From IMG/VR virus record IMGVR_UViG_3300037258_000590, positions 124,001 through 188,000 of that record: a DNA stretch of 64,000 nt; one strand, given 5' to 3'. The notes under the pieces are model-generated. The model saw nothing but the letters and a program-made list of their open reading frames with translations. It ran no database searches and had not been told where the DNA came from. Below are positions 16,855 through 40,346 of this stretch, one piece after another (within the stretch, counting starts at the first letter, position 1; each line of letters opens with the position of its first letter). Made by a program: the position numbers and the translations under genes.

Positions 16855-16974
16855 CCGTCTGTTGGTGGCGGACCATGGCACGCACAGTGACGATTCCGCA
16901 AGGGCCGGCCTTCAGTGGTCCGTTGCACTTGCTTACCCGCACGCCGCGCACCATGGCCGGCCACGGCCAGATGG
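16855..16974 (+). repeat. Hairpin motif B copy 1
   Basis: CCGTCTG-TTG-GTGGCGGACCATGG...CCATGGCCGGCCAC-GGC-CAGATGG. Confidence 0.6.
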
Positions 16975-17021
16975 ATTGAGCCGGCCGCCAGCACCCAACC
17001 GCAAGATCAGGAGTCCGCATT

Positions 17022-17126
17022 ATGTCCACCCCCATGTTCTGGGAAATTACCGCCGCGATTGTCCTGACCGTATTCACCGGAATGTTTGTCTTGCCCGTAC
17101 TCAGCGCGTACCGCAAGCAGCGTTAG
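17022..17126 (+). CDS. 34 aa membrane peptide
   Basis: CAGGAG RBS; MSTPMFWEITAAIVLTVFTGMFVLPVLSAYRKQR. Confidence 0.55.
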   Translation: MSTPMFWEITAAIVLTVFTGMFVLPVLSAYRKQR

Positions 17127-17173
17127 ACCCCGTGCATCAACCCGTTCACCAACCCAGATCAGGAGAAACCGTC

Positions 17174-18058
17174 ATGACCAGCAAGCCCAACACCAGCAAG
17201 CCCAACACCAGCAAGCCCAACACCAGCAAGCCCAACACCCCTGCCAAGCCGAACACCAGCAAGCCCAACACCAGCAAGCCCAACACCCCTGCCAAGCCGA
17301 ACACCAGCAAGCCCAACACCCCTGCCAAGCCGAAGATCGACCTGACCGCGTACAACAGCGCCGTCCGCACCGCTCGGGCCGCTGTTAAGCGCGCCGGTAT
17401 CGCCAACTGGGTTATCGGTGACGCCGCGCTTACCGTGGGCACCAAATACTCAGAGAACAAGCTCGGACAGTTTGCCGATGACATCGGAGTTGAGCTGCCA
17501 AGCGTGCGGAACATGCGCACCGTGAGCGCGGCGTACCAGGCCGACGCCATCGCTCGTGATCTCCAGTCATGGACGGTCTACGGGGTGTTCGCCTCTCAGG
17601 ATGACCGGTACGCGCTTATCGCGGCCGGCAATGACGGTAAGCCCTGGTCTGTGTCGGCCGCGCGTGCGCTGGTCAAGGGCCGGAATGAGTCGGCCGAGTC
17701 GCCGGCGGAAATGCCGGGCGGATCCGAGTCGGACGAGTCGCCGGCGGAAGTGTCGGATCTGGAGAAGGCCAGGGCCGAAGTTCAGCGGCTCGAAGGTGAA
17801 TTGCTGAAGGCACGCGCCAAGCTGGCCAAGCTGGAAGCTGGCATCAAGCAGCAACTTCCGATGCTGGCCGCTGACGGTACCGACTCGCTTGCGGCCACGG
17901 TTCCGGCGCCGATCCAGCACAGTGAACGCAGTGTGCCCGCACACGTGGCCGGCGACTTTCACGCCGCGTGCAAGCAGTGCCAGGCCGCTAAGGCATCTGC
18001 CACGGTGACCGAAATCAGCACGCCGCGCCGCGCGCGCAGTCGTAAGACTGCCGCATAA
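17174..18058 (+). CDS. Putative DNA-binding protein (LmbU-like HTH) with N-terminal (S/A)KPNT repeats
   Basis: About 10 KPNT repeats, then NWVIGDAA...YSENKLGQFADDIG...VRNMRTVSAAY...SWTVY; coiled coil and terminal CxxC. Confidence 0.55.
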   Translation: MTSKPNTSKPNTSKPNTSKPNTPAKPNTSKPNTSKPNTPAKPNTSKPNTPAKPKIDLTAYNSAVRTARAAVKRAGIANWVIGDAALTVGTKYSENKLGQFADDIGVELPSVRNMRTVSAAYQADAIARDLQSWTVYGVFASQDDRYALIAAGNDGKPWSVSAARALVKGRNESAESPAEMPGGSESDESPAEVSDLEKARAEVQRLEGELLKARAKLAKLEAGIKQQLPMLAADGTDSLAATVPAPIQHSERSVPAHVAGDFHAACKQCQAAKASATVTEISTPRRARSRKTAA

Positions 18059-18073
18059 CCCAGTCAGAACCTC

Positions 18074-18137
18074 CCGTCTGATGGTGGCCGGTCACAGTGC
18101 AGCGCTGCCTGTACCGTGACCGGCCACGGCCAGACGG
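18074..18137 (+). repeat. Hairpin motif B copy 2
   Basis: CCGTCTG-ATG-GTGGCCGGTCAC...GTGACCGGCCAC-GGC-CAGACGG. Confidence 0.7.
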
Positions 18138-18165
18138 CCGGAACCAAGATCAGGAGAAGGCACCC

Positions 18166-18420
18166 GTGAGTTTGCTAGACAGATCCGACGCACCACGCAC
18201 GCGGCGAGACGTGTCTGACTACGCCGTTGACATGCCGGTCATGGACGGGCCGTACGGCAACACTGCCGATCATGCGGCCGGCCACCGGCCAGATGCCCGG
18301 GATTTTGAACTTTTCGCGGAAGCATCCCTTACTCACAGTAAAACCCTAGCGGACACGCTCCCGTTGCTACGGCCAACAACGGCCACCTGTACCCGTTGCG
18401 GCCCGACATGCGATCACTGA
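18166..18420 (+). CDS. Hypothetical protein
   Basis: CAGGAG RBS, GTG start. Confidence 0.5.
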   Translation: MSLLDRSDAPRTRRDVSDYAVDMPVMDGPYGNTADHAAGHRPDARDFELFAEASLTHSKTLADTLPLLRPTTATCTRCGPTCDH

Positions 18421-18581
18421 TGAACTACACAATTCTGCGCACATGGTCGGACGGCCGGACACGATGGTTCACGGTCGCATGGTCGGACGGGCGGCGTACC
18501 ACGCATTCCCTGCCCGCTTAACGCCCCGCAACATTCTGACCAGTCAGCAATTCGGGCAGCTCTCAAGCAGGAGGCTTATCC

Positions 18582-19034
18582 ATGCGCACCAATGGCCGGC
18601 ACGTACGCGGCGTTATCCCGCCCGTGAACGGTAAGACGTTCGCAGCATTGCCGTTTATCGCCGGCGTCATACTGGGAGCAATCGCGGCGTTCACGCTAGC
18701 CGTAATGCCGGCGAACGCTGTAGCGCGCACCTCGCTGGCCACGGCCACGATAAGGTGCACCTTGGACGGCGGAGGATCCATAGCAGCCGGCGAGGTAGCG
18801 CACACTGATACCGGAACGTGGGCTTGCACCGAAGACAGAACACTCGTCCGCGCGCTCACGTGGCACCACCTCACGCACCTTTGCCACGCGCGTACCGTCC
18901 CGTGTACACGGGTTCCGGTTGCGGTACGCCGCGAGCTAGCCCTAGGCGGCCGGCCGGCGTTGCTGGTCATCGGTGCCACATCGTGGATTTATGTCCGCGC
19001 AGGCACGTGGGGTCTGGCGCTGTATGAGAGCTGA
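18582..19034 (+). CDS. Membrane/secreted hypothetical protein
   Basis: CAGGAGG RBS; hydrophobic segments. Confidence 0.6.
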   Translation: MRTNGRHVRGVIPPVNGKTFAALPFIAGVILGAIAAFTLAVMPANAVARTSLATATIRCTLDGGGSIAAGEVAHTDTGTWACTEDRTLVRALTWHHLTHLCHARTVPCTRVPVAVRRELALGGRPALLVIGATSWIYVRAGTWGLALYES

Positions 19035-19082
19035 CCCCGGTAGCGAACGAGTACAACCCTCCGACTAGTCGGAGCATCTCCC

Positions 19083-19146
19083 CCGTCTGATGGTGGCCGG
19101 CCACGGTGTGACACGCGCTCGCATCGTGGCCGGCCACGGCCAGACG
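19083..19146 (+). repeat. Hairpin motif B copy 3
   Basis: CGTCTG-ATG-GTGGCCGGCCAC...GTGGCCGGCCAC-GGC-CAGACG. Confidence 0.7.
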
Positions 19147-19173
19147 ACCAGTAGCTAACGGCAGGAAACAATC

Positions 19174-19530
19174 ATGACTGGACACCTCCTCATTACCCGC
19201 GACACCCACGTAACCGTACGCACGGAGAAGATACGGACCTGGAACCCGGCCGCCGGTGAATGGGTGCTGACTACGGTACCTGTACCAGAGCCAGCGCCCC
19301 GACGCAGGCCAGCTGCACGTCGCGCGCCACGCGTAGGCGCACCGCGTAACCTGGCCGGCCTGTCTGATGGCGCACCAATCCCGTCGTGGTGGCGCTATAC
19401 CGCGTTCGCTCCTGGCACGCCGCTAGCCGACATGCGCAGCTATCTCCCGGCGCCGGCCATGCGTACGCACCGCGCGGCGGCGGTAGTACCAGCATCGCCA
19501 GAGGTGTACGCCCCGCCGCTCGCGCGCTGA
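19174..19530 (+). CDS. Hypothetical protein
   Basis: CAGGAA RBS; array orientation. Confidence 0.6.
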   Translation: MTGHLLITRDTHVTVRTEKIRTWNPAAGEWVLTTVPVPEPAPRRRPAARRAPRVGAPRNLAGLSDGAPIPSWWRYTAFAPGTPLADMRSYLPAPAMRTHRAAAVVPASPEVYAPPLAR

Positions 19531-19581
19531 AACGCTCCCGAAGCTCCGACCAGTCAGAACATCCAAGACAGGAGTCCGTAA

Positions 19582-19764
19582 ATGGTTTTCCGCATCGTCA
19601 TGGCCGCGATGGCCGCGCTCATCGCAGGTCTCGCCATCAGCAGCGCCATCATGTTGGTCGTCGTGGGCGGCGACAAACCGCTGCACCACACGTACGCCTG
19701 TGACTTCTCCCGTGATTACCGGCAGGAAGTGCACTTGCCTCCGGCCGCTTGCAACACGCCTTAA
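19582..19764 (+). CDS. Small membrane protein
   Basis: GACAGGAG RBS; one TM segment. Confidence 0.6.
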   Translation: MVFRIVMAAMAALIAGLAISSAIMLVVVGGDKPLHHTYACDFSRDYRQEVHLPPAACNTP

Positions 19765-19843
19765 CCGGGCTGTGCCAGTCGCACATTGCGTTAAGCCAGA
19801 AGCTCCAACCAGTCAGAACATCACCAGTTAGGGGATAACGATC

Positions 19844-20302
19844 ATGACTGCTGTGCCAAGCGTCATCGAGTACAGCATCGACGGGGGCCGGGCCTGGTTC
19901 CACGGCCGGACCATCGAAGCATGGGTGACCGCGCATAAGGCCACGCTTAGCAACCAGCGGGCCATCGTGCGCGGCTTTGCGCGGCAGGAGCTAGGCGCCG
20001 TCGAAGCGATCACTACCCGCGTGCTGGCGGCGGATGACCCGCGCGGCGTGCTGAACCAGCCGCCCGCGGCCAGGACCTGGACCCACGGCCAGGTTCTCCG
20101 CGCCGTCAGTGACGGTACCAGCCTGGTCACCGATGACCCGCAGCTTGGCGCTTGCGAACGTGAAACCGATCTAGTCAGCATGGCCGGCCGGGCGATCATG
20201 GCCATCCTGGCAGACCCGTCCGTCACGCTAGACACCGTGATGGACACCGATTACGCGGGCGGCGCGGCACACGTGCGCACGTGGTGGGACGGCTGGCGCT
20301 AA
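19844..20302 (+). CDS. Hypothetical protein
   Basis: AGGGGA RBS. Confidence 0.6.
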   Translation: MTAVPSVIEYSIDGGRAWFHGRTIEAWVTAHKATLSNQRAIVRGFARQELGAVEAITTRVLAADDPRGVLNQPPAARTWTHGQVLRAVSDGTSLVTDDPQLGACERETDLVSMAGRAIMAILADPSVTLDTVMDTDYAGGAAHVRTWWDGWR

Positions 20303-20433
20303 GCCGAACCCTCCCACCAGTGGGAGCTTACCGTCAGTAATCCACCAGACAGGAGCAATCGAGATGCCCGCTTACAACGACAACCCGGCTGTGACCGGCT
20401 CAGGTCACCTACCCATGGTCGAGAGATAAGCCC

Positions 20434-20718
20434 ATGTTTTTCAATGAAATACCGGACTCCGAAATTACCGGCTTCGCCAGCAAATCCGGGCTTTTCTACG
20501 AGTTCAGCGATTTCGTCGTCCTGTTGCATGGCGGCACCTACTACTGGTCCTCGGACAGTGGATGCTCGTGCCCTAGTCCGTTCGAGTCCCACCAATTCCC
20601 CGATGACTTCGGATCAGGGAACGCCGTCCAGGCGCTCAATGCCCTGGATGAATGGAGCCAGGGCACTCCGGTCGATGACGACGGCTTGCGTACCCGGCTA
20701 ATAAGCGCGCGGGCCTAG
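20434..20718 (+). CDS. Actinophage-type conserved protein
   Basis: YYWSSDSGCSCPSPFE motif recalled from actinophage hypothetical proteins. Confidence 0.6.
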   Translation: MFFNEIPDSEITGFASKSGLFYEFSDFVVLLHGGTYYWSSDSGCSCPSPFESHQFPDDFGSGNAVQALNALDEWSQGTPVDDDGLRTRLISARA

Positions 20719-20762
20719 ACCACCCACCCGTCACAGGCAGCCCGGCGACCAGCCAGCAATTA

Positions 20763-20849
20763 GGCGAAACGTTCCCACTGGTCGGAGCTTTCCGGCCACG
20801 CGGGACGTCCACGGGAGGCTGACCACCCCGTGCCGAAGATGCCAGGTCA
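20763..20849 (+). ncRNA. Type II hammerhead ribozyme HH1 (core CCGAAGA)
   Basis: GGC-GAAA; stem III ACGTTCC/GGGACGT; GUC site after 20809; stem I CACGGG/CCCGTG; CCGAAGA-T-GCC; pseudoknot TGACC/GGTCA. Confidence 0.75.
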
Positions 20850-20868
20850 CCAGACAGGAGCGAATGCA

Positions 20869-20982
20869 ATGGACGATAACCGCACAGACAGCCCCGGCCA
20901 AGGTTCCCGCCGGCCCGCGCTGGACACGTACGCCGACAGGGTGGCCGCCGCGGAAACCGTCATAGCCAATAACGGCTGGTAA
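20869..20982 (+). CDS. 37 aa peptide
   Basis: GACAGGAG RBS after HH1. Confidence 0.45.
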   Translation: MDDNRTDSPGQGSRRPALDTYADRVAAAETVIANNGW

Positions 20983-21024
20983 TCGCCGGAAGATGCCGGA
21001 TAACACAGAGCAGGAGCTGTACCA

Positions 21025-21426
21025 ATGATCACCCGCGATGACGCGCTGACCGCCGGGGAATTCCACGAGGAGCACGAGCCGGCCGGCAAGGTCTACGCCT
21101 GGCGGCGTAACGGCCAGACGCAGATCACGATGACCCGCCCGGACGATTTCCGCGTACCGGTCACGTACGGCCTGCGATCTCACCACCAGATCACGCCGGA
21201 CAACGCGCACCGCTTCCACCGCGCGGACCAGTGCCTGACGCTACGCGTCCGCGTAGCCATCCCGGACGGCGGCGGCGAATGGTACGGGATCGTGATCGAA
21301 GAATTGCTGGCAGACAACGCCGGCTACGGCGTCACGCGCGTGCACGTAACCACACGCGGAGCATCGCGCTACCGCGTCGGCTCACAGGTCGACGTCCCGA
21401 CCAAGCGACTGACCTACCTGCAGTAA
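21025..21426 (+). CDS. Phage-type conserved protein
   Basis: WRRNGQTQ...RPDDFRVPVTYGL...ITPDNAHRFH motif; stop TAA abuts HH2. Confidence 0.7.
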   Translation: MITRDDALTAGEFHEEHEPAGKVYAWRRNGQTQITMTRPDDFRVPVTYGLRSHHQITPDNAHRFHRADQCLTLRVRVAIPDGGGEWYGIVIEELLADNAGYGVTRVHVTTRGASRYRVGSQVDVPTKRLTYLQ

Positions 21427-21514
21427 GGCGAAACGTTCCCACTGGTCGGAGGTTGCTCCGGCCGGAGGGGGCGTCCACGGGCGCTGACCTTCCCGTGCCG
21501 ATGATGCCAGGTCA
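21427..21514 (+). ncRNA. Type II hammerhead ribozyme HH2 (core CCGAUGA)
   Basis: Stem III ACGTTCCC/GGGGGCGT; GUC after 21475; stem I CACGGG/CCCGTG; pseudoknot TGACC/GGTCA. Confidence 0.78.
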
Positions 21515-21536
21515 ACCAGATGAGGAGACACCAGCC

Positions 21537-21773
21537 ATGCGCGGATTCATGTTCCCGGCCACGGCCGCCATCCTGCTGCGCGAGCGGACGTGGATGCCCG
21601 ACGTGGCGATCGCCAGCTGGCTCCGCAACTACGGCAAGTCGGGAGAGCGGTTCTTCATCCAGACCACGCGGCCCGGCAACGATCACTACCTGGTCCAGCC
21701 GGCTCCAGGCGGGTTCTGCATCGTGCCGTGCCGGATGGCCCCGGGCACGCCGGCCGGGTACGTCCTGGCCTGA
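21537..21773 (+). CDS. Hypothetical protein
   Basis: GAGGAG RBS; between HH2 and HH3. Confidence 0.6.
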   Translation: MRGFMFPATAAILLRERTWMPDVAIASWLRNYGKSGERFFIQTTRPGNDHYLVQPAPGGFCIVPCRMAPGTPAGYVLA

Positions 21774-21783
21774 CTGTCCGCCA

Positions 21784-21868
21784 GGCGAAACGTTCCGACC
21801 AGTGGGAGATTCCGGCCGGCCGGAACATCCGCGGGCAATGACCTCCCCGCGCTGACGATGCCAGGTCA
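21784..21868 (+). ncRNA. Type II hammerhead ribozyme HH3 (core CUGACGA, AUC site)
   Basis: Stem III GTTCCG/CGGAAC; site after 21829; stem I CGCGGG/CCCGCG; pseudoknot intact; C15.2:A16.2 mismatch. Confidence 0.75.
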
Positions 21869-21888
21869 CGAAAGCTCAGGAGACAGAC

Positions 21889-22410
21889 ATGCCCGCATAC
21901 GACGACAACCCGGCCGTGACCGGGGATTACGTCTGGATCACGGCTGACGGCACGGCCGGGCGGCGTTCCCGCGCGGCGCAGGTCAACGCCGCCAAGCGCG
22001 CCTACGAACGCAGCCACGGCGTGACGCTGACGCTGCTTGCCAGGAGCTACAGCGAAACGTACGGCTTCTTGCACCGGTCAGCGTTCCGGTACGAGATCGG
22101 CCGGCCCGGCCAGTCTTTCACGATCACGTACATGTCCGTGCGATGCGAGGTATGGGACACCGAGCCGGGCACGTACCCGACCATGGCCGCAGCGCAAGCG
22201 CACGTACGGTCAGCGTTCCGAACCCTGTCATCATACTGCCGGGTACGGATCCACGCGCCGGCCGGCCGGCAGAGCCAGGTCGGCTCGCGTACCGGTCTCG
22301 GCCCCTGGTACTTCGAGCCGTGCCCGGCGGGCGGGCGCGTGACCCTGCGCTTCCCGGGATTCCCGCCCGTTACCTGCGCCGGCCCCTCCATCACCGCTAT
22401 CGACGCGTAA
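21889..22410 (+). CDS. Hypothetical protein
   Basis: CAGGAG RBS; stop abuts HH4. Confidence 0.65.
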   Translation: MPAYDDNPAVTGDYVWITADGTAGRRSRAAQVNAAKRAYERSHGVTLTLLARSYSETYGFLHRSAFRYEIGRPGQSFTITYMSVRCEVWDTEPGTYPTMAAAQAHVRSAFRTLSSYCRVRIHAPAGRQSQVGSRTGLGPWYFEPCPAGGRVTLRFPGFPPVTCAGPSITAIDA

Positions 22411-22495
22411 GGCGAAACGTTCCGGCCTGCCGGTTCTTCCCGCCGGCCGGAACGTCTGTGAGAGCTGACCTCCTCACACTGACGATGCCAGGTCA
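22411..22495 (+). ncRNA. Type II hammerhead ribozyme HH4 (core CUGACGA)
   Basis: Stem III ACGTTCCGGCC/GGCCGGAACGT; GUC after 22456; covaried stem I TGTGAG/CTCACA; pseudoknot intact. Confidence 0.88.
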
Positions 22496-22514
22496 CCAGA
22501 GATCAGGAGACACC

Positions 22515-22685
22515 ATGCCGAACGCCACCAGTGACCCGCGCGCCGTCGCCCGGTTCGCGACCATGCGCCGCATCCAGGCGGCTGACGCGCCGGCCCGGTA
22601 CACGCGCAGCCGTCGCCTGGCGGCCATGGGGAAGGGTTACCACGGACCGCTGACCCGCGCGGAGCTAGCCCGTCGAACGGCGTAA
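22515..22685 (+). CDS. 56 aa basic peptide
   Basis: CAGGAG RBS. Confidence 0.55.
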   Translation: MPNATSDPRAVARFATMRRIQAADAPARYTRSRRLAAMGKGYHGPLTRAELARRTA

Positions 22686-22687
22686 CA

Positions 22688-22777
22688 GGCGAAACGTCCC
22701 ACTGATCGGAGGTTACTCCGGCCAGCCGGGACGTCCGCGGGCGCTGAGCACCCCGTACCGAAGAAGATGCCGGATCA
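22688..22777 (+). ncRNA. Hammerhead HH5, degenerate
   Basis: Stem III and GUC (22735) intact; core CCGAAGA followed by extra AGA; weakened stem I and pseudoknot. Confidence 0.5.
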
Positions 22778-22789
22778 CCGGAGGTACAC

Positions 22790-23035
22790 GTGAAAATCCA
22801 GCAAGCCCACTACGACCACATGGTCACGGAGATAAATACAGCTGTAACCAGGATCGGGCCAGATAGGGTGGCCAGCTTCAAGACGCATGTATCGCCGAAA
22901 CGATACCGGTGGGACCTGCTGCGCGCCGCCAACCTCATCCCGTACGTGTGCAGCACGCTCTACCCGTACATGAAGGACGAGCACATAGACACCGCGCTGC
23001 GCCACATCGTAGCCGACCCGTCAAACAAGCTTTAG
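22790..23035 (+). CDS. Phage-type hypothetical protein
   Basis: GGAGG RBS; RYRWDLL...LYPYMKDEHIDTALRHIV. Confidence 0.65.
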   Translation: MKIQQAHYDHMVTEINTAVTRIGPDRVASFKTHVSPKRYRWDLLRAANLIPYVCSTLYPYMKDEHIDTALRHIVADPSNKL

Positions 23036-23058
23036 GCGAAACGTCCGTTCCGCGCCTA

Positions 23059-23134
23059 GGCGAAACGTTCCGATCCTCCCACCGGTCGGAACGTCTACGG
23101 GAGCTGACCTACCCGCACTGAAGATGCCAGGTCA
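23059..23134 (+). ncRNA. Type II hammerhead ribozyme HH6 (core CUGAAGA)
   Basis: Stem III ACGTTCCGA/TCGGAACGT; GUC after 23095; stem I TACGGG/CCCGCA (1 mismatch); pseudoknot intact; a duplicated GGCGAAACGT stub lies at 23035. Confidence 0.82.
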
Positions 23135-23152
23135 CCAGATGAGGAGACGGCT

Positions 23153-23737
23153 ATGAGTGATCGTGAATGGATACCGGCGGCAGACGTCCAGGTCGGCGAC
23201 CAGCTGGCCCACAAGCTGTCGAACACACCGTGGACCTACACGCCGGTTACAGGCTGGTCGGACAAGGTTCTCCACCTCGGGGGCAGCCTCGGGAACGTCA
23301 CGCAGCGCCGGTTCACCGTATCCGGGGCGCCGTGGTGGGTCACCTCAGATGCGGCCAGTCTCTGGCATTCGCTGGACGGGCAAGCACTGGTCCTGAACCT
23401 GGGCAAATACCCCGAGCCTGAACCAATGCCCGAGCCCGAGCCCGAGCCCGAGCCTGTCACGCGCATCGTCCTGGGCGATGACTACTACGGGTTCCGCATG
23501 CCGGTACCGTCCGGCTTCACCGATTACCTGCTGGCCAGCACCGACGATAAATGGGCAGTCCTGGAGTCCATCGGCATCACGCGGCGCGATGACGTCTCCC
23601 CGCTGGCCGCGTGGCGCGACGCGGTAGCCGATGAGACCGGGATTCCCCGCGCGCAGCTAGACCCGGCCCAGGGCGGCGTATTCGACATCGGGTTTACGCC
23701 CGCGTACGTCCGCAAATTCGTGTTCTTCCTGGCCTGA
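23153..23737 (+). CDS. Hypothetical protein with PE-repeat linker
   Basis: GAGGAG RBS; PEPEPMPEPEPEPEP. Confidence 0.65.
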   Translation: MSDREWIPAADVQVGDQLAHKLSNTPWTYTPVTGWSDKVLHLGGSLGNVTQRRFTVSGAPWWVTSDAASLWHSLDGQALVLNLGKYPEPEPMPEPEPEPEPVTRIVLGDDYYGFRMPVPSGFTDYLLASTDDKWAVLESIGITRRDDVSPLAAWRDAVADETGIPRAQLDPAQGGVFDIGFTPAYVRKFVFFLA

Positions 23738-23844
23738 CCCGCAAAGACGTTTCCCGGCCCTTGATCCCCCGAAGCCGGCCGGGACGGCAACCCAGGGGGG
23801 CTAACACCACCCCGCTCAGGATCATGAGACAGGAGACAGCAACC

Positions 23845-24417
23845 ATGATCAAGGTGCTAGTTCAGTCCGTCCCGGACGAAATTCCGGACGGCACGCGCTA
23901 CGAAGTCGCGGCCGGCCTGCCGGGAGACATGACCGGCTGGTTCCAGATCTCACACGCGGGCCTGGTGCTGGCCACGGGCGAGCACAACTACCACGATGAC
24001 AGCGACTTCTACGCAACCGTATGGGACGGCCAGGGGCCGCGCGAGATCACCTACGCCAGCACGCGCGGGTGGACCTATGCCAACAGTGCCACGGCAGACG
24101 CCACGCCGGAGGTACAGGCCGCCTACGGCGCGTGGCGCCAGGCCCGCGCGGGCGAGCGTCAGGCCGCAGCCACGGCAGCGGAGGCGGCCACGCCACGCGC
24201 CGGCAAGACAGTCCGGGTGGTCAGAGGCCGCAAGGTGCCCGTGGGCACTGTGGCGGAAGTCGTCTGGTACGGCGAGGGTAAGCGGTTCAGCCGCCATGCG
24301 CCAGTCCCGATGCGCGTTGGCCTGCTGACCGGCGACGAGCGCGTGTTTACTGATGCGGCCAACGTCGAAGTCGTGACGGCCGATGAGCCAGGCCACCCGA
24401 TGAGGAGACACCTGTGA
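23845..24417 (+). CDS. Phage-type conserved protein
   Basis: GACAGGAG RBS; HNYHDDSDFYATVWD and GKTVRVVRGRKVPVGT motifs. Confidence 0.7.
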   Translation: MIKVLVQSVPDEIPDGTRYEVAAGLPGDMTGWFQISHAGLVLATGEHNYHDDSDFYATVWDGQGPREITYASTRGWTYANSATADATPEVQAAYGAWRQARAGERQAAATAAEAATPRAGKTVRVVRGRKVPVGTVAEVVWYGEGKRFSRHAPVPMRVGLLTGDERVFTDAANVEVVTADEPGHPMRRHL

Positions 24418-24755
24418 AAGTCATCAAAGAGATTGACCACGATCCCCGCACTGTTCGCGAGGTCCGTGTGTTCGTCCGTCAGTACATTTTCGTTGACGGT
24501 GTATCCAGCTACGACGTCCACCTGTCCGAGCTGCGGTACCGCAGCTCAGACGGTGAGCTGACCGACTGCCTGACACTGGACGACAGCTTTAGCCACGTGC
24601 CCGGAGACGCTGAAATAGAAGCCCTGCCGTACATCGCTCCCAGCGTACGGCGCGAGGCCCCCGGGGTGTTCTACATCCTGACCGGGCCTTACCGGAAAGG
24701 CCCGTACGCAAACCGCAGGGAGGCTAACGCGGACATCAGGGCTGGCCGCTGGTAA
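24414..24755 (+). CDS. Hypothetical protein
   Basis: GAGGAG RBS; GTGA overlap. Confidence 0.6.
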   Translation: MKVIKEIDHDPRTVREVRVFVRQYIFVDGVSSYDVHLSELRYRSSDGELTDCLTLDDSFSHVPGDAEIEALPYIAPSVRREAPGVFYILTGPYRKGPYANRREANADIRAGRW

Positions 24756-24779
24756 CCCCCTGCGCACTACCACTAGCCA

Positions 24780-24855
24780 GGCGAAACATTTCGATTCTCC
24801 CACTGGTCGGAACGTCCGCGAGAGCTAACCTGCCCGCGCCGATGATGCCAGGTCA
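24780..24855 (+). ncRNA. Type II hammerhead ribozyme HH7 (core CCGAUGA)
   Basis: Stem III ACATTTCGA/TCGGAACGT (1 mismatch); GUC after 24816; stem I CGCGAG/CCCGCG; loop TAACC vs tail GGTCA. Confidence 0.68.
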
Positions 24856-24876
24856 CGAGATAAGGAGACAGGTTCT

Positions 24877-25169
24877 GTGATCTACCAGGTCGGCCGGTTC
24901 ACCCGCGACCAGTTCACATCGGACGCCGCTTTCCACGCGGCGATCAGGTGCCAGATGATCAGTTGCCCCGAGCTGTACCCCGAGCTGGCAGAGGCCGCCG
25001 CCGAGACCGAGCGGCTGGCACCCAAGATCCGCAAGACCGGAAAGAAGACATCATGAACCCCTACCTGGTCCGCGACGAGAACGGCGAGCCGGTCATGCGG
25101 TTGGTCGAACGTGACCGCTACGGCCGGTTCTGCCGACCTTACTACGCCTACATCTGGAAGACATCATGA
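24877..25169 (+). CDS. Two coupled small ORFs (24877-25056 and 25053-25169)
   Basis: AAGGAG RBS; ATGA overlaps; both end KTS. Confidence 0.5.
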
Positions 25170-26473
25170 GCGTCAGCCTTAGCGCGGCAGCATCGGTCCG
25201 GCAGCACGCGGAGCGCCTGGAGAAGGATATCCGCAACCAGGCCAAAACCGTAGCCTACGACCTGACCATGTGCGCCCAAGCCGTGTTACGCGTGCGATCA
25301 GCCGGTCAAGTAACCCAGGAAGAAGAGAAGGCTATGGAAGCTAGCAAACTGAGCGCCGCCTACACCAGCGGCCCGCCGCACCCGCTCGCCGCCCGGCCGC
25401 GCGAGTACACCGGCCCGATGGCCCCGGACCACAAGCTGGGCGGCATCTACGCCATCATGGACCGGCACGGCATGCTGCCGGACGGACCGGGCGGGATCGC
25501 CTGCCTGCGGTGCGCGAAGCCGCTCAACGCTGACGGCGGCCACCCCGCTGAGCTGTACGCCGGGACATACAACGGCCTGTGCTACCCGTGCACCTCGGCG
25601 CCGGCATTCGTGGCCCGCACGGCCGTCCTGGACGGCGCCCGGGAGGTGTCCTGGCCGCCGCACTGCCCGTCGTGGCGCCGGGACCGCGAGAAGCACATTG
25701 CCTATGAAGGCTGCCCGGCCTGCGACGGCCTAGGCATCACCCTGGGCACCCGGACCTACAGCAGCGGCGGCCGGTCATGCGAGCCGTGCCGGACCCGGTT
25801 CTGCGGCCACCCGGTACGCGCGGCGGCCAGCCGGTGGAACGAGCAGGCCATGCGGTCTTGCCAGGCCGCCTTCGACCAGGCCATCGACCAGGCCGCGGGC
25901 GTGCCAGCACGATGCACCAGGAAACGTCGCACCGAGCTGCGTGAGGCGTTCATCGGCCTCGCCGGGAACGGCCGCTCGCCGGAATGCGAAGCGCTGCGCC
26001 TGGCTCACCTGGCTGGCTACTGGCGCATCCGCGCGCTTATCCGCGCGCACTTCGAGGCGCGAGGCTGGAACCAGTGGTCAGATACCAGCAACGATGAGGC
26101 GTGGGCCAGGGCGTACTGCACCTGGCGCGGACTGGATTATGACGCGCTGGCCGCCGGCGAGCCCCAGCCCGGACCGCCTGAGCCCCAGCCCGAACCGCCT
26201 GGGCCGGAAAACCCGCAAGCCGGGCGGATCGCCGTGCTACGGGCCCTGACCTTCGAGCGGGCCGAGGAGTGGTGGCGTACCGGCCGGATCAGTACCGACG
26301 AGTGGGAGGCGTTCGGTTACGCCTGGCGGCGCGGCGCCGTCCGCTTCTCCGGCGTCGGCGCCGGTTTCGAGCACCCCGTCTCGCAAAAGGTGCGCGAGCT
26401 GGGCAACGCCATCATGGGCGGCAATGCACCAGGCACCTGCCCGTGCCCGGCGGGCGAGAACTGCACCCTGTGA
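25166..26473 (+). CDS. Multi-CxxC hypothetical protein
   Basis: CLRC, CYPC, CPAC, CEPC motifs; ATGA overlap. Confidence 0.65.
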   Translation: MSVSLSAAASVRQHAERLEKDIRNQAKTVAYDLTMCAQAVLRVRSAGQVTQEEEKAMEASKLSAAYTSGPPHPLAARPREYTGPMAPDHKLGGIYAIMDRHGMLPDGPGGIACLRCAKPLNADGGHPAELYAGTYNGLCYPCTSAPAFVARTAVLDGAREVSWPPHCPSWRRDREKHIAYEGCPACDGLGITLGTRTYSSGGRSCEPCRTRFCGHPVRAAASRWNEQAMRSCQAAFDQAIDQAAGVPARCTRKRRTELREAFIGLAGNGRSPECEALRLAHLAGYWRIRALIRAHFEARGWNQWSDTSNDEAWARAYCTWRGLDYDALAAGEPQPGPPEPQPEPPGPENPQAGRIAVLRALTFERAEEWWRTGRISTDEWEAFGYAWRRGAVRFSGVGAGFEHPVSQKVRELGNAIMGGNAPGTCPCPAGENCTL

Positions 26474-26514
26474 AGCGACCCAGCATCACCCCGTAACTAC
26501 CGAAAGGCCCTGAA

Positions 26515-26763
26515 ATGTCTGACCGGTCTGAGCTGGCTACTCCATCCGGGTACGCCGGCGTTGAATACACGGACGGTAAGGTGCACGCCATCGACCTGGA
26601 CACGCTGCACGGTGAGACGCCGGCGTACCCGCGCGGGATGCCGTTGTGGCGCGAACCCGTGGTGTGCGGGGCCGCTAGTGGCGTGTCCAGCGATGAGGGC
26701 GGTCCTGCCGCGTTGCACCGCAAGACGCTCACCTGCTGGATGTGCGTCTCCATCCTGGCCTGA
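26515..26763 (+). CDS. Hypothetical protein
   Basis: Array orientation; LTCWMC. Confidence 0.55.
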   Translation: MSDRSELATPSGYAGVEYTDGKVHAIDLDTLHGETPAYPRGMPLWREPVVCGAASGVSSDEGGPAALHRKTLTCWMCVSILA

Positions 26764-26817
26764 GATCTTCCCACTGGTCGGAGCTTCCGGCCGGGCTGCT
26801 TACGACAGGAAAACCAC

Positions 26818-27060
26818 ATGACTGAATTCATCAGCGGCTACCGGGACCGCGCGGGCATTGACTCACGCGCCAATTCCGCGCTACTGCGCATTGCCGCGAT
26901 CAGCGCGGACGTGTACGTGCCGGCCGCCGTGCGTCTCGCGCAGGTCGCGCAGGTCATGGCGGGCGAGCCGATCCTCACGGACCCGTGCCCGGCCGCACGC
27001 ACCGTACGCGCGGAGCTTGCCGGCCGCACCGCTCTGCAAGACAGAGGGCTGACCTCATGA
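26818..27060 (+). CDS. Hypothetical protein
   Basis: GACAGGAA RBS. Confidence 0.55.
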   Translation: MTEFISGYRDRAGIDSRANSALLRIAAISADVYVPAAVRLAQVAQVMAGEPILTDPCPAARTVRAELAGRTALQDRGLTS

Positions 27061-27589: not shown

Positions 27590-27780
27590 GCGGCAGGGAC
27601 AAGCTCAACGCCCAACCGGACGAGGACCCGGCACTGAACACGCGTATCGCAGAGCTGGAAGCCGAACAGCAGGCCGCGATCACGGCTGGCACGATCAGCG
27701 CATGGGAGCGGACGCCGGCATGCGCAGAACTGGACCGGCTGCGCGACGAGCGCGGCTACCGGCCGGGTACTGCCGGATAG
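27586..27780 (+). CDS. Small hypothetical protein
   Basis: GTGA overlap; stop overlaps HH8. Confidence 0.55.
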   Translation: MSGRDKLNAQPDEDPALNTRIAELEAEQQAAITAGTISAWERTPACAELDRLRDERGYRPGTAG

Positions 27781-27864
27781 GCGAAACGTCCAGCCGGCAG
27801 GAAACTTCCGGCTCGCAGGAACATCCATGAGAGCTGACCGTCTCACGGAGATGATGCCAGGTCA
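27780..27864 (+). ncRNA. Hammerhead HH8 with mutated core (GAGAUGA), probably inactive
   Basis: Stem II, pseudoknot and stem I CATGAG/CTCACG retained; C3 and U4 substituted. Confidence 0.55.
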
Positions 27865-27881
27865 CCACGACAGGAGCTGAC

Positions 27882-28991: not shown

Positions 28992-29561
28992 GTGATGAAG
29001 ACCGTGCAGACCGTACCTGATGCGCTGGCCAGCGTGAACGCAGCTCAAAGCGCACCCGTGCAATTCGAGCCAGGGCCTCTCCATACACTGGTCGCACTGC
29101 GTCACATAGCCCGTGAGCTGACCGCGCTGCGTGACCTGGCCGCAGCGGTGCGAGCCGCGCTGGCCGTACCGTCTGACGCAGATGAGCTGGCCGACGCGGC
29201 GGACCGGGAAGCACGCAGCATGGCCCCGCCCGTACCCGGTGTTACCCGCGTGGGCGGCTACGTGGTCCGGGCACTCATCACGACCCCCGGCCGGAACACC
29301 GCATGGTTCGTCGCGGCCGAAGGTGACAGCGAGCACAGCACCGGACGCTGGTCCACCTGGCGGGCCGAGCAGGATTCCACCGGGCACCTGCTGTTCAGCT
29401 GCGCCCGGTTCTTTAACGTCCGGGCGGGGCTGACCGCGGCGGATATCCAGGCTGACTTGCACAATGAGCCTGAAACCTGGCGCCCCGACAGGCCGCACAA
29501 CCGCACCGCGGCGCTAGCCAGCCTGGCCGGACGAGCGGGCATCACGCCGGCCGCGGAATAG
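28992..29561 (+). CDS. Hypothetical protein, paralogue of the C-terminal domain of 35117-36286
   Basis: ARSMAPPVPGVTRVGGYVVRA...WFVAAE...WSTW. Confidence 0.65.
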   Translation: MMKTVQTVPDALASVNAAQSAPVQFEPGPLHTLVALRHIARELTALRDLAAAVRAALAVPSDADELADAADREARSMAPPVPGVTRVGGYVVRALITTPGRNTAWFVAAEGDSEHSTGRWSTWRAEQDSTGHLLFSCARFFNVRAGLTAADIQADLHNEPETWRPDRPHNRTAALASLAGRAGITPAAE

Positions 29562-29622
29562 GCGAAACGCCCCCGCCAGCCGGGGTTTTTCCGGCCGCGC
29601 TATGACAGGAGAACAGCACACC

Positions 29623-30009: not shown

Positions 30010-30064
30010 TCACAGTAACCGCTGAATACTGCGGCCGGATACGGACGTAGACGACCAGACGATA

Positions 30065-30150
30065 GGCGAAACGTTCTGGCCAGCCGGAAATTTCCGCGTG
30101 GCCAGAACGTCCGCGGGGGCTGACCTCCTCGCGCTGATGATGTCAGGTCA
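30065..30150 (+). ncRNA. Type II hammerhead ribozyme HH9 (canonical CUGAUGA)
   Basis: 12-bp stem III ACGTTCTGGCCA/TGGCCAGAACGT; GUC after 30111; stem I CGCGGGGG/TCCTCGCG; stem II GTC/GGC; pseudoknot TGACC/GGTCA. Confidence 0.9.
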
Positions 30151-30167
30151 TAGAACAGGAGCTGATC

Positions 30168-30356: not shown

Positions 30357-30366
30357 CAGTCCATCA

Positions 30367-30453
30367 GGCGAAACGTTCTGACCAGCCGGAGATTTTCCGC
30401 GTGGCCAGGACGTCCGCGGAGGCTGACCGCCTCGCGCTGATGATGCCAGGTCA
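30367..30453 (+). ncRNA. Type II hammerhead ribozyme HH10 (canonical CUGAUGA)
   Basis: Stem III ACGTTCTG/CAGGACGT; GUC after 30414; stem I CGCG..AGG/CCTCGCG; pseudoknot intact. Confidence 0.88.
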
Positions 30454-30471
30454 CGAACAGGAGCGCAGATC

Positions 30472-32945: not shown

Positions 32946-32946
32946 A

Positions 32947-33022
32947 GGAACGTCCGACCAGTCGGAACTTCCGGCTGGCCGGCACACCCCGCAGGCACTA
33001 ACCGGCCTGTGATGCCGGGTCA
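32947..33022 (+). repeat. Decayed hammerhead HH11
   Basis: GGAACGTCCG...hairpin...CCTGTGATGCCGGGTCA; GAAA and CUGA core segments damaged. Confidence 0.55.
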
Positions 33023-33041
33023 GCTAAGACAGGAGCAGGTT

Positions 33042-34722: not shown

Positions 34723-34723
34723 A

Positions 34724-34813
34724 GGTGAAACGTCCCGCTGGCCGGAGCTTCCGGCCGGCGGGGCGTCCGCGAGAGCCAGCCGCCTCGCCGACCTGAACCG
34801 CTCGGAGGATGCC
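34724..34813 (+). ncRNA. Hammerhead-like HH12 with an insertion in the core
   Basis: GGT-GAAA; stem III ACGTCCCGC/GCGGGGCGT; GUC after 34767; CCGA-[16 nt]-GA-T-GCC. Confidence 0.45.
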
Positions 34814-38023: not shown

Positions 38024-38102
38024 CGGCGAAACGTCCCGCCGGCCGGAACTTCCGGATAGCGGGGCGTCCGCGGGGGATAGCCGCCTCGCGCTGATGATGC
38101 CG
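38024..38102 (+). ncRNA. Type II hammerhead ribozyme HH13 (CUGAUGA, 4-bp stem II, no pseudoknot)
   Basis: CGGC/GCCG stem II; stem III ACGTCCCGC/GCGGGGCGT; GUC after 38068; stem I CGCGGGG/CCTCGCG. Confidence 0.78.
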
Positions 38103-38347
38103 AACCGTTTTTTATGACAGGAGTGCTGATCGTGATCGGTATTTGCATCGGGTTTACGCGAATCGGTGAGGCGGCGACATGGCGGGAGGCCATGGCCGCT
38201 TGCACGACCTGGGCGAGTTCATGAAGTCGGCGGCCGGTTTCGAACAGCGGGGCTGGCACGGGTTCGCCGCGGACTCGGCGGTCAGCGGGGTTCTGGTCCG
38301 GCTGATCGATGACGAGACGGTGCAGACCGGTTTCGCGGTGAGCTGAG

Positions 38348-40184: not shown

Positions 40185-40240
40185 CGGCGAAACGTCCCGC
40201 CGGCCGGAACTTCCGGATAACGGGGCGTCCCTGAGGGCCG
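40185..40240 (+). repeat. 5' half of a hammerhead (HH14), truncated
   Basis: Nearly identical to the first 46 nt of HH13; no CUGANGA downstream. Confidence 0.65.
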
Positions 40241-40346
40241 GCCGCCTGCCGGACGGCAGCCTGTACGTCGTGATCCTGAGCACCCTGGACCAGCGCACCA
40301 GCACGTAAGTCAGCACCAGCAGCAGCACAAGACAGGAGAACCCGTA

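What the first reader, a model, noticed from the sequence alone, without database searches (positions are those of the whole stretch)
20763..23134. Six consecutive hammerheads delimit gene-sized RNAs that could circularise
Predicted cut-to-cut fragments are 666, 354, 627, 279 and 360 nt (and 303 nt for HH9-HH10). Each carries one ORF with its own RBS, except the 666-nt fragment, which has two. Each fragment keeps stem I plus the RBS at its 5' end and the stem III hairpin at its 3' end. The 5'-OH and 2',3'-cyclic-phosphate ends are RtcB ligase substrates. Inference: stabilised monocistronic mRNAs or retrozyme-like circular coding RNAs, and possibly RNA-mediated cassette mobility.
Basis: inference. 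Interest (0 to 1): 0.7.

Follow-up and report, generated by a model that had tools for sequence, protein, structure and literature searches.

The report
Hammerhead ribozyme array punctuating phage genes
In a 210-kb soil phage genome, six copies of a type II hammerhead ribozyme each fill the gap between one small gene's stop codon and the next gene's ribosome-binding site; they most likely cut a long transcript into hairpin-capped single-gene mRNAs, which is a known arrangement in an unusually dense form, and nothing supports circular RNAs.

Summary
The sequence observation holds. Six type II hammerhead (HH) elements lie at 20762-23136 on the + strand. The cut-to-cut distances are exactly 666/354/627/279/360 nt, with one ORF plus its own SD per fragment and two in the first.

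They belong to a family of 12 copies plus relics, all within window 20.7-40.3 kb of a complete 210-kb tailed phage. The fold, including a loop I/3'-tail pseudoknot, is supported by covariation. A model built only from 70 copies in five other soil contigs recovers all six.

Only two of the six (22410, 23058) have a fully canonical core. One has a C.A mismatch at 15.2-16.2, two carry U4C, and one (22687) is probably dead.

Other contigs carry denser arrays, up to 36 copies in 24.7 kb, with invariant cores, a free N7 and the same stop-HH-SD-start layout.

Best reading: self-cleavage yields mono- or oligocistronic mRNAs with hairpins at both ends. Clustered prophage hammerheads of this kind were described in 2011.

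Circular or retrozyme-like RNA is unsupported: the phage has no RtcB, reverse transcriptase or RNA ligase, and no RNA run was listed. Cassettes are reshuffled at the HHs between related contigs, and DNA recombination between the repeats is enough to explain that.

The parts
20762..20851 (+). HH1, type II hammerhead. Cut predicted after C20809. Core variant U4C (box CCGAAGA).
   Evidence: R2 67.6 bits. Rfam 23.5 bits.
20869..20982 (+). ORF A, 37 aa, SD GGAG 8 nt upstream of the start.
   Evidence: 43-49% identical homologs, each flanked by HHs on both sides, in L024 and L046.
21025..21426 (+). ORF B, 133 aa, own SD. Its stop TAA overlaps the first base of HH2.
   Evidence: GC3 0.85. 17 metagenomic homologs. 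No Pfam or PHROG hit.
21426..21516 (+). HH2. Cut after C21475. Core variant U4C (CCGAUGA).
   Evidence: R2 77 bits.
21537..21773 (+). ORF C, 78 aa.
   Evidence: GC3 0.92. 70% identical homolog L052 2149-2364.
21783..21870 (+). HH3. Cut after C21829. Consensus CUGACGA box, but AUC at the cleavage triplet (C15.2.A16.2 mismatch).
   Evidence: R2 80.7 bits.
21889..22410 (+). ORF D, 173 aa. Its stop TAA overlaps the first base of HH4.
22410..22497 (+). HH4. Cut after C22456. Fully canonical core (CUGACGA, GAAA, GUC), pseudoknot intact.
   Evidence: R2 88 bits.
22515..22685 (+). ORF E, 56 aa.
   Evidence: frame check. 50% identical homologs in L020 and L052.
22687..22779 (+). HH5, degenerate: U4C plus a 3-nt insertion in the box, a C.A mismatch at 1.1-2.1 and one pseudoknot mismatch. 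The cut after C22735 is doubtful.
   Evidence: R2 only 47.5 bits.
22790..23035 (+). ORF F, 81 aa, GTG start, SD GGAGG.
23034..23048 (+). Stub: the first about 14 nt of a hammerhead (AGGCGAAACGUCCG) overlapping the stop of ORF F, 24 nt before the real HH6. It looks like a junction scar.
23058..23136 (+). HH6, with a short stem III. Cut after C23095. Canonical core (CUGAAGA). A.C mismatch at 1.2-2.2 in this strain.
   Evidence: R2 80.9 bits. Variant 23097 A>G in runs X2 and X3 restores the pair.
23153..23737 (+). ORF G, 194 aa, the first gene after HH6.
24779..24857 (+). Seventh copy: U4C, a mismatch in stem III and one in the pseudoknot.
27779..27866 (+). Eighth copy. Box GAGAUGA (C3 and U4 both changed) and AUC at the cleavage triplet. 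Probably inactive.
   Evidence: 47.6 bits.
30064..30152 (+). Cut after C30111.
30366..30455 (+). Cut after C30414. Together with 30064 it brackets a 303-nt unit holding the 62-aa ORF 30168-30356.
38024..38109 (+). Canonical copy with a different loop I and tail. The only one above Rfam's gathering score (39.6 bits).
34723..34801 (+). Degenerate copy: GGUGAAAC, and the CUGANGA box is disrupted.
40185..40269 (+). Relic. Its 5' half, through GUC, is 44/45 identical to that of copy 38024. Its 3' half is scrambled.
32946..33024 (+). Decayed full-length relic.
29560..29600 (+). Half-hammerhead stub: AGGCGAAACG plus a hairpin followed by T5 (terminator-like), then directly an SD.

Best explanation
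The six elements are members of a phage-borne subfamily of type II hammerhead ribozymes. Each serves as a complete intergenic module: stop codon, then HH, then about 10 nt, then SD, then the start codon.

Proposed mechanism:
- The + strand block of small genes is transcribed as long polycistronic RNA (inferred).
- Each competent copy cleaves itself after GUC.
- The upstream product ends in the long stem III hairpin with a 2',3'-cyclic phosphate and one unpaired nucleotide.
- The downstream product begins with a 5'-OH that is already base-paired in stem I. Its leader is locked by the loop I/tail pseudoknot just ahead of a free SD.

The result is mono- or oligocistronic mRNAs. Their stability and translation are insulated from whatever gene lies next door, like a natural RiboJ-type insulator.

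As a by-product, the roughly 80-nt repeats act as recombination points at which gene cassettes are exchanged between related phages.

In this particular genome the array is partly eroded. Efficient cleavage is expected at 22456, 23095, 30111, 30414 and 38068. It should be slower at 21829, weak at 20809, 21475 and 24816, and absent at 22735 and 27825.

Shown: the motif, its fold, the layout, core conservation in relatives, and the synteny breaks. Inferred: co-transcription, cleavage in vivo, and the stabilising or insulating benefit.
For: (1) Fold. The three-way junction with stems I and III capped and stem II open has 89.4% of cells paired in the 11 window copies. In 80 distinct rows it has 95.2%, against 24-43% when slid. 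Sixteen pairs carry double changes. Pseudoknot pair 79-111 is AU 49 / GC 20, and the pseudoknot was not part of the search model.

(2) Catalytic signature in the 70 copies from other contigs. G12, A13, A14, A15.1, U16.1, C17, C3, G5, A6, G8 and A9 are each 70/70. N7 is free (A22, C15, G22, U11). The 1.1-2.1 pair is CG 47 / UA 23. That is selection for catalysis, not merely for a hairpin.

(3) Strand. All copies lie on the coding strand, and 17 G.U cells among the 11 window copies would be A.C on the other strand.

(4) Layout over 73 inter-HH gaps. Forty-eight hold one ORF. The first start codon lies 15-24 nt after the HH in most gaps. The last stop lies within -1 to +12 nt of the next HH in most gaps.

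(5) Hairpin caps. Stem III is -16 to -32 kcal/mol in the six copies (as weak as -5.5 in the eroded copy at 24779) and ends 1 nt before the cut. Stem I starts at the first nucleotide of the 3' product in eight of the eleven window copies.

(6) Transcription signals. No sigma-70-like promoter was found in 12000-31999 and no terminator-like hairpin inside the six-copy run.

(7) Precedent. Clustered type II HHs flanking single genes in prophages cleave in vitro and in E. coli (PMC3088659). Type II HHs next to phage-like genes cleave in vivo in D. vulgaris (PMC8782182).

(8) Natural variants at 23097 and 30420 in other populations turn stem I A.C mismatches into G-C pairs.
Against: - No RNA data exist for this phage; no RNA run was listed. 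Cleavage and co-transcription are therefore untested.
- Four of the six copies deviate from the canonical pattern, three of them in the conserved core. U4C is reported to lower activity considerably in vitro (PMC3088659).
- A related 150-kb phage (G001), and contigs that carry ORF B homologs, have no such HHs. The module is therefore dispensable for expressing at least some homologous genes.
- The promoter scan covers only sigma-70-type sites. The host, possibly an actinobacterium, may use other promoters.
- The stabilising or insulating benefit rests on general knowledge of bacterial RNases and of synthetic ribozyme insulators, not on any test here.
Confidence: 0.6

Rival explanations
1. The cut-to-cut fragments are circularised, either by host RtcB or by the hammerhead's own reverse reaction. 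They would then act as stable circular mRNAs or as RNA intermediates of cassette transfer, in the manner of retrozymes.
For: - The ends would be 5'-OH and 2',3'-cP, which are RtcB substrates (established knowledge).
- Stem II (GGC/GCC) is the same in all copies. The two ends of any fragment could therefore rebuild a hammerhead.
- One clean chimeric HH (L020:1740) has its crossover within the 5 nt before the cleavage site.
- The 3' half of an HH is co-inherited with the downstream gene (p = 1.5e-4).
Against: - The complete phage genome has no RtcB, RVT_1 or RNA_ligase domain.
- After cleavage the two products are held together only by a 3-bp helix, because the pseudoknot lies wholly within the 3' product.
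- Predicted end-joining stem II probabilities range from 0 to 0.67 and are uninformative.
- Other breakpoints are not at the cut site. Several pairs that share only the upstream gene also share the whole HH.
- The 5' half is not significantly co-inherited with the upstream gene (p = 0.13).
- Perreault et al. looked for circular or spliced products in comparable arrays and detected none.
- The ORFs have ordinary stops.
Confidence: 0.06
2. The elements matter mainly at the DNA level, as dispersed repeats that promote modular shuffling of accessory gene cassettes in the way PeSL motifs do in T4-type phages. RNA cleavage would be incidental or already decaying in this genome.
For: - In 9 of 19 HH junctions whose two flanking genes both have homologs in the same other contig, those homologs are not adjacent there.
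- Gene order differs between the window, L052 and L020.
- Chimeric HHs, half-HH stubs and relics occur at 23034, 29560 and 40185.
- Four of the six copies here depart from the canonical pattern.
- All copies lie in one 20-kb region of ORFan genes.
Against: - Pure DNA repeats would not keep eleven catalytic nucleotides invariant in 70/70 copies while N7 drifts freely. They would also not show compensatory changes in three helices and a pseudoknot.
- The precise spacing to the SD and start codon argues for an RNA-level role.
- The two roles are not exclusive.
Confidence: 0.2
3. They are not ribozymes at all but another kind of structured intergenic repeat, such as terminators, attenuators or protein-binding hairpins, that resembles a hammerhead by chance.
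For: Rfam's Hammerhead_II model scores the six below its gathering threshold, at 19.5-28.2 against 37 bits.
Against: - The full hammerhead core, the NUH site, the three helices and the family-typical loop I/tail pseudoknot are all present and covary.
- No U-tract follows stem III.
- One window copy and one relative copy pass Rfam's threshold.
- The low Rfam scores come from the long stem III and an extra U after A9 (alignments).
Confidence: 0.03

Closest known systems
Clustered type II hammerhead ribozymes flanking single genes in prophages (Perreault et al. 2011, PMC3088659; Rfam RF02276)
   Same: - Type II topology, with a pseudoknot between loop I and the tail 3' of stem II.
- Intergenic position in phage DNA, with several copies in one orientation bracketing single genes or short gene blocks.
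- The same proposed role: processing long phage transcripts into gene-length mRNAs.
- The same alternative, circular or spliced products, was raised there and not detected.
   Different: - Density and number. The arrays tested there had three copies. Here there are 12 copies plus relics in 20 kb, and relatives have 36 in 24.7 kb and 13 in 8.6 kb.
- This subfamily has a 31-43-nt stem III and, in most copies, an extra U after A9. It falls below Rfam's threshold in 10 of 11 window copies and in 32 of 33 copies in L052, L030 and L024.
- Strict stop-HH-SD-start spacing and association with synteny breakpoints were not described in that paper, as far as I read it.
Synthetic ribozyme insulators such as RiboJ (own knowledge; not checked in the paper library)
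   Same: A self-cleaving hammerhead placed just upstream of an SD removes the upstream RNA context and leaves a 5'-OH hairpin leader. This makes expression of the downstream gene independent of its neighbour.
   Different: RiboJ is an engineered type III satellite-virus hammerhead with an added hairpin. The element here is a natural type II ribozyme, and the upstream product is also left with a stable 3' hairpin.
PeSL regulatory cassettes in T4-type phages (Arbiol et al. 2010, PMC2839356; PMC4122927)
   Same: Short repeated regulatory motifs flank small ORFan genes in a hyperplastic genome region. Recombination between them shuffles, deletes and replaces cassettes between related phages.
   Different: PeSLs are a promoter plus a terminator, so each cassette is a separate transcription unit. 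Here the repeat is a ribozyme, with no promoter or terminator consensus. DNA mini-circles, shown for PeSLs, could not be tested here.
Retrozymes and viroid-like circular RNAs with hammerheads (PMC4918200, PMC7761336)
   Same: Two hammerheads in direct orientation delimit an RNA of a few hundred nucleotides with 5'-OH and 2',3'-cP ends.
   Different: - Those use type III or type I hammerheads and are non-coding.
- They circularise through a host tRNA ligase or RtcB, are copied by a reverse transcriptase supplied in trans, and have been detected as circles.
- Here the units are coding, the ribozyme is type II with a 3-bp open stem II, the phage has no RT or ligase, and there is no RNA evidence.

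Membership tests
Hammerhead ribozyme, type II (Rfam RF02276) | Conserved catalytic core: C3 U4 G5 A6 N7 G8 A9, G12 A13 A14, A15.1-U16.1. | tested here: met
   Met in full by 22410 and 23058, and outside the run by 30064, 30366 and 38024. Also met by 21783. 20762 and 21426 have U4C, a natural variant known to be slow but viable. 22687 fails: U4C plus an insertion. In 70 related copies every invariant position is 70/70 except U4, which is 66/70.
Hammerhead ribozyme, type II (Rfam RF02276) | Three helices around the core, with stems I and III closed by loops and stem II open (type II permutation). | tested here: met
   Pair counts are 89.4% paired for the window copies and 95.2% for all copies, against 24-43% when slid. 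Stems I and III show compensatory changes. MFE folds of single copies reproduce the junction.
Hammerhead ribozyme, type II (Rfam RF02276) | Cleavage-site triplet N-U-H following stem III. | tested here: met
   GUC in four of the six and AUC in 21783. AUC is still NUH but breaks the 15.2-16.2 pair. GUC in 70/70 relatives.
Hammerhead ribozyme, type II (Rfam RF02276) | Tertiary contact between loop I and the tail 3' of stem II (a pseudoknot of 4 or more bp, typical of type II). | tested here: met
   UGACC pairs with GGUCA (5 bp). It covaries to UGGCC/GGCCA in 20 relatives and to UGGCU/AGCCA in one. One mismatch in 22687.
Hammerhead ribozyme, type II (Rfam RF02276) | Score at or above Rfam's gathering threshold (37 bits). 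| tested here: not met
   The six score 19.5-28.2 bits. Only 38024 passes, at 39.6 bits. This is a property of the curated model: canonical relatives also fail in 32 of 33 cases. It is not a defining biochemical feature.
Hammerhead ribozyme, type II (Rfam RF02276) | Site-specific self-cleavage giving 5'-OH and 2',3'-cyclic phosphate ends. | not testable with these tools
   No RNA run was listed for this sequence. Only DNA metagenomes hold it.
Retrozyme / viroid-like circular RNA | The RNA is detected as a covalently closed circle (back-splice junctions). | not testable with these tools
   No RNA data.
Retrozyme / viroid-like circular RNA | A reverse transcriptase (in trans) and an RNA ligase are available for the cycle. 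| tested here: not met
   The complete phage genome has no RVT_1, RtcB or RNA_ligase (PF09414) match. The host is unknown, so a host RtcB cannot be excluded.
Retrozyme / viroid-like circular RNA | A non-coding unit bounded by type III or type I hammerheads within long direct repeats. | tested here: not met
   The units are protein-coding and the ribozymes are type II. The repeats are the ribozymes themselves.
PeSL-type mobile regulatory cassette | The repeat consists of an early promoter plus a terminator stem-loop. | tested here: not met
   No sigma-70-like promoter in 12-32 kb. Stem III is not followed by a U-tract.
PeSL-type mobile regulatory cassette | The repeats coincide with insertion, deletion and replacement boundaries between related phages. 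| tested here: met
   Nine of 19 informative junctions are non-syntenic. Chimeric HHs exist.

The most novel reading that the evidence does not exclude
A lineage of soil phages uses one hammerhead subfamily as a universal gene separator and as the joint of a cassette-exchange system. The cut-to-cut RNAs themselves, which all carry compatible stem II halves, would be re-ligated or circularised and would take part in cassette transfer or serve as long-lived circular mRNAs. This would be RNA-level modular exchange in a DNA phage.
Probability: 0.05. Interest if true: 0.9.

Novelty: new variant of a known kind. Interest (0 to 1): 0.5.

Why it matters
What the thousands of genomic hammerheads in bacteria and phages actually do is still an open question (PMC6765202). 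This phage group offers an unusually clean system for studying it. Dozens of copies of one ribozyme sit in a fixed stop-HH-SD-start frame. Natural slow and dead variants lie side by side. Related genomes hold the same genes in a different order, or lack the ribozymes altogether.

It also shows that Rfam's curated threshold misses almost the whole subfamily, so such arrays are probably under-reported.

If the insulating role is confirmed, the element would be a natural counterpart of the ribozyme insulators used in synthetic biology. It would also be a second example, after PeSLs, of a regulatory repeat that doubles as a recombination joint for phage accessory genes.

Tried and rejected
- Rfam at gathering and at E-value thresholds: only sub-threshold scores for the six. 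I therefore built family models R1 and R2.
- Megablast and blastn against 50,697 isolate phage records: no match for the region or for a single HH.
- Exact family pattern in IMG/VR contigs: none.
- The same pattern in 185,579 species genomes: 15 single hits, none of which is a hammerhead by Rfam, so they are chance matches.
- Searches of the phage genome for RtcB, RVT_1 and RNA_ligase: none.
- Pfam and PHROGs on 30 ORFs of the region: only one DUF and one PHROG of unknown function.
- RNA sequencing runs: none was listed. Cleavage and circles could not be checked.
- DNA contigs of four soil runs: no cassette deletions or circles between HHs. These are assembler contigs that drop rare forms, and most joints were paralogous HHs cross-mapping.
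- Thermodynamic test of whether fragment ends re-pair through stem II: probabilities 0-0.67, and equally erratic for intact HHs, so uninformative.
- Idea that the CCUCC loop of stem III (in 23058 and 24779) masks the downstream SD until cleavage: it applies to only 2 of 11 copies, so I did not pursue it.
- Apparent N-terminal homology of ORF D with L052 and L020 ORFs: the DNA alignment shows similarity confined to the HH, the SD and the start codon.
- One search was an empty script.


Full report
**Where the window lies.** The window is bases 124001-188000 of a 210,383-bp IMG/VR virus record with direct terminal repeats, rated 100% complete, at 66.7% G+C. It is a genuine tailed phage. An HK97-type major head protein, a portal and a large terminase lie on the minus strand at genome 86-110 kb, and tail genes lie at 33-46 kb. 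The capsid protein's best matches among isolates are Streptomyces phages at about 32% identity. An actinobacterial host is therefore plausible but not shown. The DNA comes from soil metagenomes.

**The observation.** Reading 20600-23300 shows six copies of one motif on the + strand. Each has AGGC-GAAA, a long hairpin, GUC, a second hairpin, a CUGANGA-like box, and UGCC followed by AGGUCAC. This is the type II permutation of the hammerhead.

- Stem II (GGC/GCC) is open.
- Stem III and stem I are capped by loops.
- The scissile bond follows C17, between the two hairpins.

The C17 positions are 20809, 21475, 21829, 22456, 22735 and 23095. They give 666, 354, 627, 279 and 360 nt, and the 30111-30414 pair gives 303 nt.

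The gaps hold ORFs 20869-20982 and 21025-21426, then 21537-21773, 21889-22410, 22515-22685 and 22790-23035. Each ORF has its own SD and high GC3. The upstream stop codon overlaps or abuts the first base of the next hammerhead. The next start codon lies 54-61 nt after the cut.

**Is it real?** Rfam's Hammerhead_II model puts only one window copy (38024) above its gathering score. The six score 19.5-28.2 bits. Three independent lines show they are hammerheads all the same.

1. An alignment of 11 window copies supports the three helices and a 5-bp pseudoknot between loop I (UGACC) and the tail (GGUCA). It has 89.4% of cells paired, against 28-43% when slid, and ten pairs have changes on both sides.
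2. A scan of public metagenome contigs with the family's two conserved ends found five other soil contigs. A covariance model then found 70 further copies in them.
   - Every catalytic nucleotide is invariant (70/70) except U4 (66 U, 4 C).
   - N7 is free (A22, C15, G22, U11).
   - The 1.1-2.1 pair switches between C-G (47) and U-A (23).
   - The pseudoknot covaries A-U to G-C (49 and 20), although the search model did not include it.
3. A model built from those 70 foreign copies alone recovers all six window elements at 47.5-88 bits.

The fifteen pattern matches in bacterial genomes are chance hits, not hammerheads.

**State of the six copies.**

| Copy | State |
|---|---|
| 22410 | Canonical |
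| 23058 | Canonical core; an A.C mismatch in stem I is G-C in the populations of runs X2 and X3 |
| 21783 | Consensus core but AUC, which breaks the 15.2-16.2 pair; that pair is G in 70/70 relatives |
| 20762, 21426 | U4C |
| 22687 | U4C, a 3-nt insertion in the box, a 1.1-2.1 mismatch and a pseudoknot mismatch; lowest score under R2; probably dead |

U4C is a known natural viroid variant. It cleaves poorly in vitro yet suffices in vivo (PMC3088659). It also recurs in four relatives. One of these is the copy upstream of the ortholog of the 37-aa ORF A in contig L024.

Outside the run, 30064, 30366 and 38024 are canonical. 24779 and 27779 are damaged, 34723 is disrupted, and relics or half-copies lie at 23034, 29560, 32946 and 40185. 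All copies lie on the + strand within window 20.7-40.3 kb. The other 190 kb of the genome has none. The array in this genome is therefore real but partly eroded. The best candidates for discrete excised RNAs are 22457-23095 and the 303-nt unit 30112-30414.

**The wider picture.** The relatives carry much denser arrays.

| Contig | Length | Copies |
|---|---|---|
| Ga0210383_10001119 | 24,717 bp | 36 |
| Ga0307478_10005789 | 8.6 kb | 13 |
| Ga0307478_10013583 | 5.6 kb | 10 |

- Of 73 inter-hammerhead gaps, 48 hold exactly one ORF.
- The first start codon is 15-24 nt after the ribozyme in most gaps.
- The last stop is within -1 to +12 nt of the next ribozyme in most gaps.

Several window ORFs have homologs at 43-78% identity in these contigs, including the 37-aa ORF A. 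The small ORFs are therefore real genes and the contigs are related phages. None of the 30 ORFs tested has a known function.

A more distant 150-kb relative and several contigs with ORF B homologs lack the family entirely. One of the latter contigs (L073) has a different type II hammerhead variant, again placed directly before an SD and ATG. Rfam's threshold detects only 1 of 33 copies in three of the array contigs. This may explain why such arrays are not widely annotated.

**Mechanism.** The anatomy points to RNA processing.

- The 5' product of each cleavage would end in a 31-43-nt hairpin of -16 to -32 kcal/mol in the six copies, with a single unpaired nucleotide carrying the cyclic phosphate.
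- The 3' product would start with a 5'-OH nucleotide that is usually already paired in stem I. The pseudoknot follows, then a free SD.
- By general knowledge of bacterial RNA decay, 3' exonucleases need a single-stranded toehold, and RNase E and RNase J sense an accessible 5' monophosphate. Such ends should therefore be protective. This step is inference.
- The fixed distance to the SD suggests the module also standardises translation initiation, as engineered ribozyme insulators do (own knowledge).
- No sigma-70-type promoter was found in 12000-31999, and no terminator-like hairpin lies within the run. This is consistent with co-transcription but does not prove it.

Perreault et al. (2011) already reported that multiple hammerheads flank single genes in prophages. 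Three tandem arrays cleaved in vitro, and one also cleaved in E. coli. They proposed processing into gene-length mRNAs. Type II hammerheads beside phage-like genes cleave in vivo in D. vulgaris.

**Circular RNA.**

- The phage has no RtcB, reverse transcriptase or RNA ligase domain.
- In a type II hammerhead the two cleavage products are joined only by the 3-bp stem II, because the pseudoknot lies wholly within the 3' product. Product release should be fast and religation disfavoured.
- All copies share the same stem II, so a fragment's ends could in principle rebuild a ribozyme. The thermodynamic estimate of this was uninformative.
- No RNA run was listed.
- The earlier study looked for circles and found none.

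I rate this reading at about 0.06.

**Cassette exchange.** Gene order differs among the window, L052 and L020 while orientation is kept. For 19 hammerheads, both flanking genes have homologs in the same other contig. In nine of these, the homologs are not neighbours there.

- The part of the ribozyme 3' of the cut is significantly more similar when the downstream gene is shared. The median identity is 0.85, against a background of 0.76 (p = 1.5e-4).
- The 5' part is not significantly tied to the upstream gene (p = 0.13, n = 15).
- One clean chimera (L020:1740) has its crossover within ACGUC, just before the scissile bond. Other pairs show whole-ribozyme co-inheritance.
- Stubs at 23034, 29560 and 40185 look like junction scars.

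Hammerheads therefore mark recombination joints. The pattern is what homologous recombination between roughly 80-nt repeats would give, as shown for PeSL motifs in T4-type phages (PMC2839356). An RNA intermediate is not needed and is not indicated.

**Verdict.** It is unsupported on circular RNA. It is right that cassettes move, but probably wrong about RNA mediating the movement. The kind of system is known. The subfamily, the density of the arrays, the rigid stop-HH-SD-start frame and the link to synteny breaks are new details that deserve an experiment.

Noticed in passing
L020, L030, L037 and L046 (together contig Ga0210383_10001119, 24,717 bp); L052; L024: Other soil contigs carry far denser arrays of the same hammerhead subfamily: 36 copies in 24.7 kb, 13 in 8.6 kb and 10 in 5.6 kb. 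Their cores are almost all canonical. Rfam's gathering threshold detects only 1 of 33 copies in L052, L030 and L024.
   Followed up: yes
window 23097 and 30420: Two stem I A.C mismatches in this strain's hammerheads are G-C in other populations (A>G in runs X2 and X3, and in X4). Together with G>A at position 16.2 of copies 21783 and 27779, four helix-weakening differences in this genome are all G-to-A on the + strand.
   Followed up: partly
window 21421: Variant C>T in runs X2, X3 and X4 turns the last sense codon of ORF B (CAG) into TAG. In those populations the ORF ends one codon earlier, just before the hammerhead.
   Followed up: no
window 29560-29600: A half-hammerhead: AGGCGAAACG plus a hairpin followed by T5. 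It scores as an intrinsic-terminator-like site and runs directly into an SD. It may be a hammerhead 5' half converted into a terminator.
   Followed up: partly
window 40185-40269 compared with 38024-38109: The relic shares 44 of 45 nt with copy 38024 from the start through GUC and then diverges. The similarity ends within a base or two of the cleavage site.
   Followed up: partly
window 23075-23084 and 24796-24804: The short stem III loops of copies 23058 and 24779 contain CCUCC or CUCC, which is complementary to the downstream SD (GAGGAG). They could mask the SD until cleavage removes stem III. Only 2 of 11 copies have this.
   Followed up: no
window 49935-50011: Weak R2 hit (21.3 bits) with a CCAGGUCAC tail followed by GACAGGAG. 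It may be another decayed copy outside the main region.
   Followed up: no
L068 10444-10522 (likewise L069 and L070): In contigs with ORF B homologs but no hammerheads, the intergenic space after that gene gives a sub-threshold tRNA-like Rfam match (34 bits to tRNA-Sec). ARAGORN does not call a tRNA there. It may be a different processing signal.
   Followed up: partly
L073 587-661: A different type II hammerhead variant (Rfam 31.4 bits) with its own loop/tail pseudoknot (GUAGC/GCUAC). It sits directly before an SD and ATG in a more distant relative.
   Followed up: partly
window 6353-8998 (-): An 881-aa protein combining a terminase/exonuclease-like ATPase region with an FtsK/SpoIIIE-like region. 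It is separate from the genuine large terminase at genome 107012-109819.
   Followed up: no
genome 95481-97133 (-), locus L011 9481-11133: A transposase gene (phrog_506, E 3e-47) lies among the structural genes, between the major head protein and a nucleotide-sugar epimerase. It may be an insertion sequence inside the phage.
   Followed up: no
window 55596-57668 (+): A 690-aa protein with a DNA topoisomerase domain (phrog_6247, E 2e-76). A primase/polymerase-like protein lies at 52476-53867.
   Followed up: no
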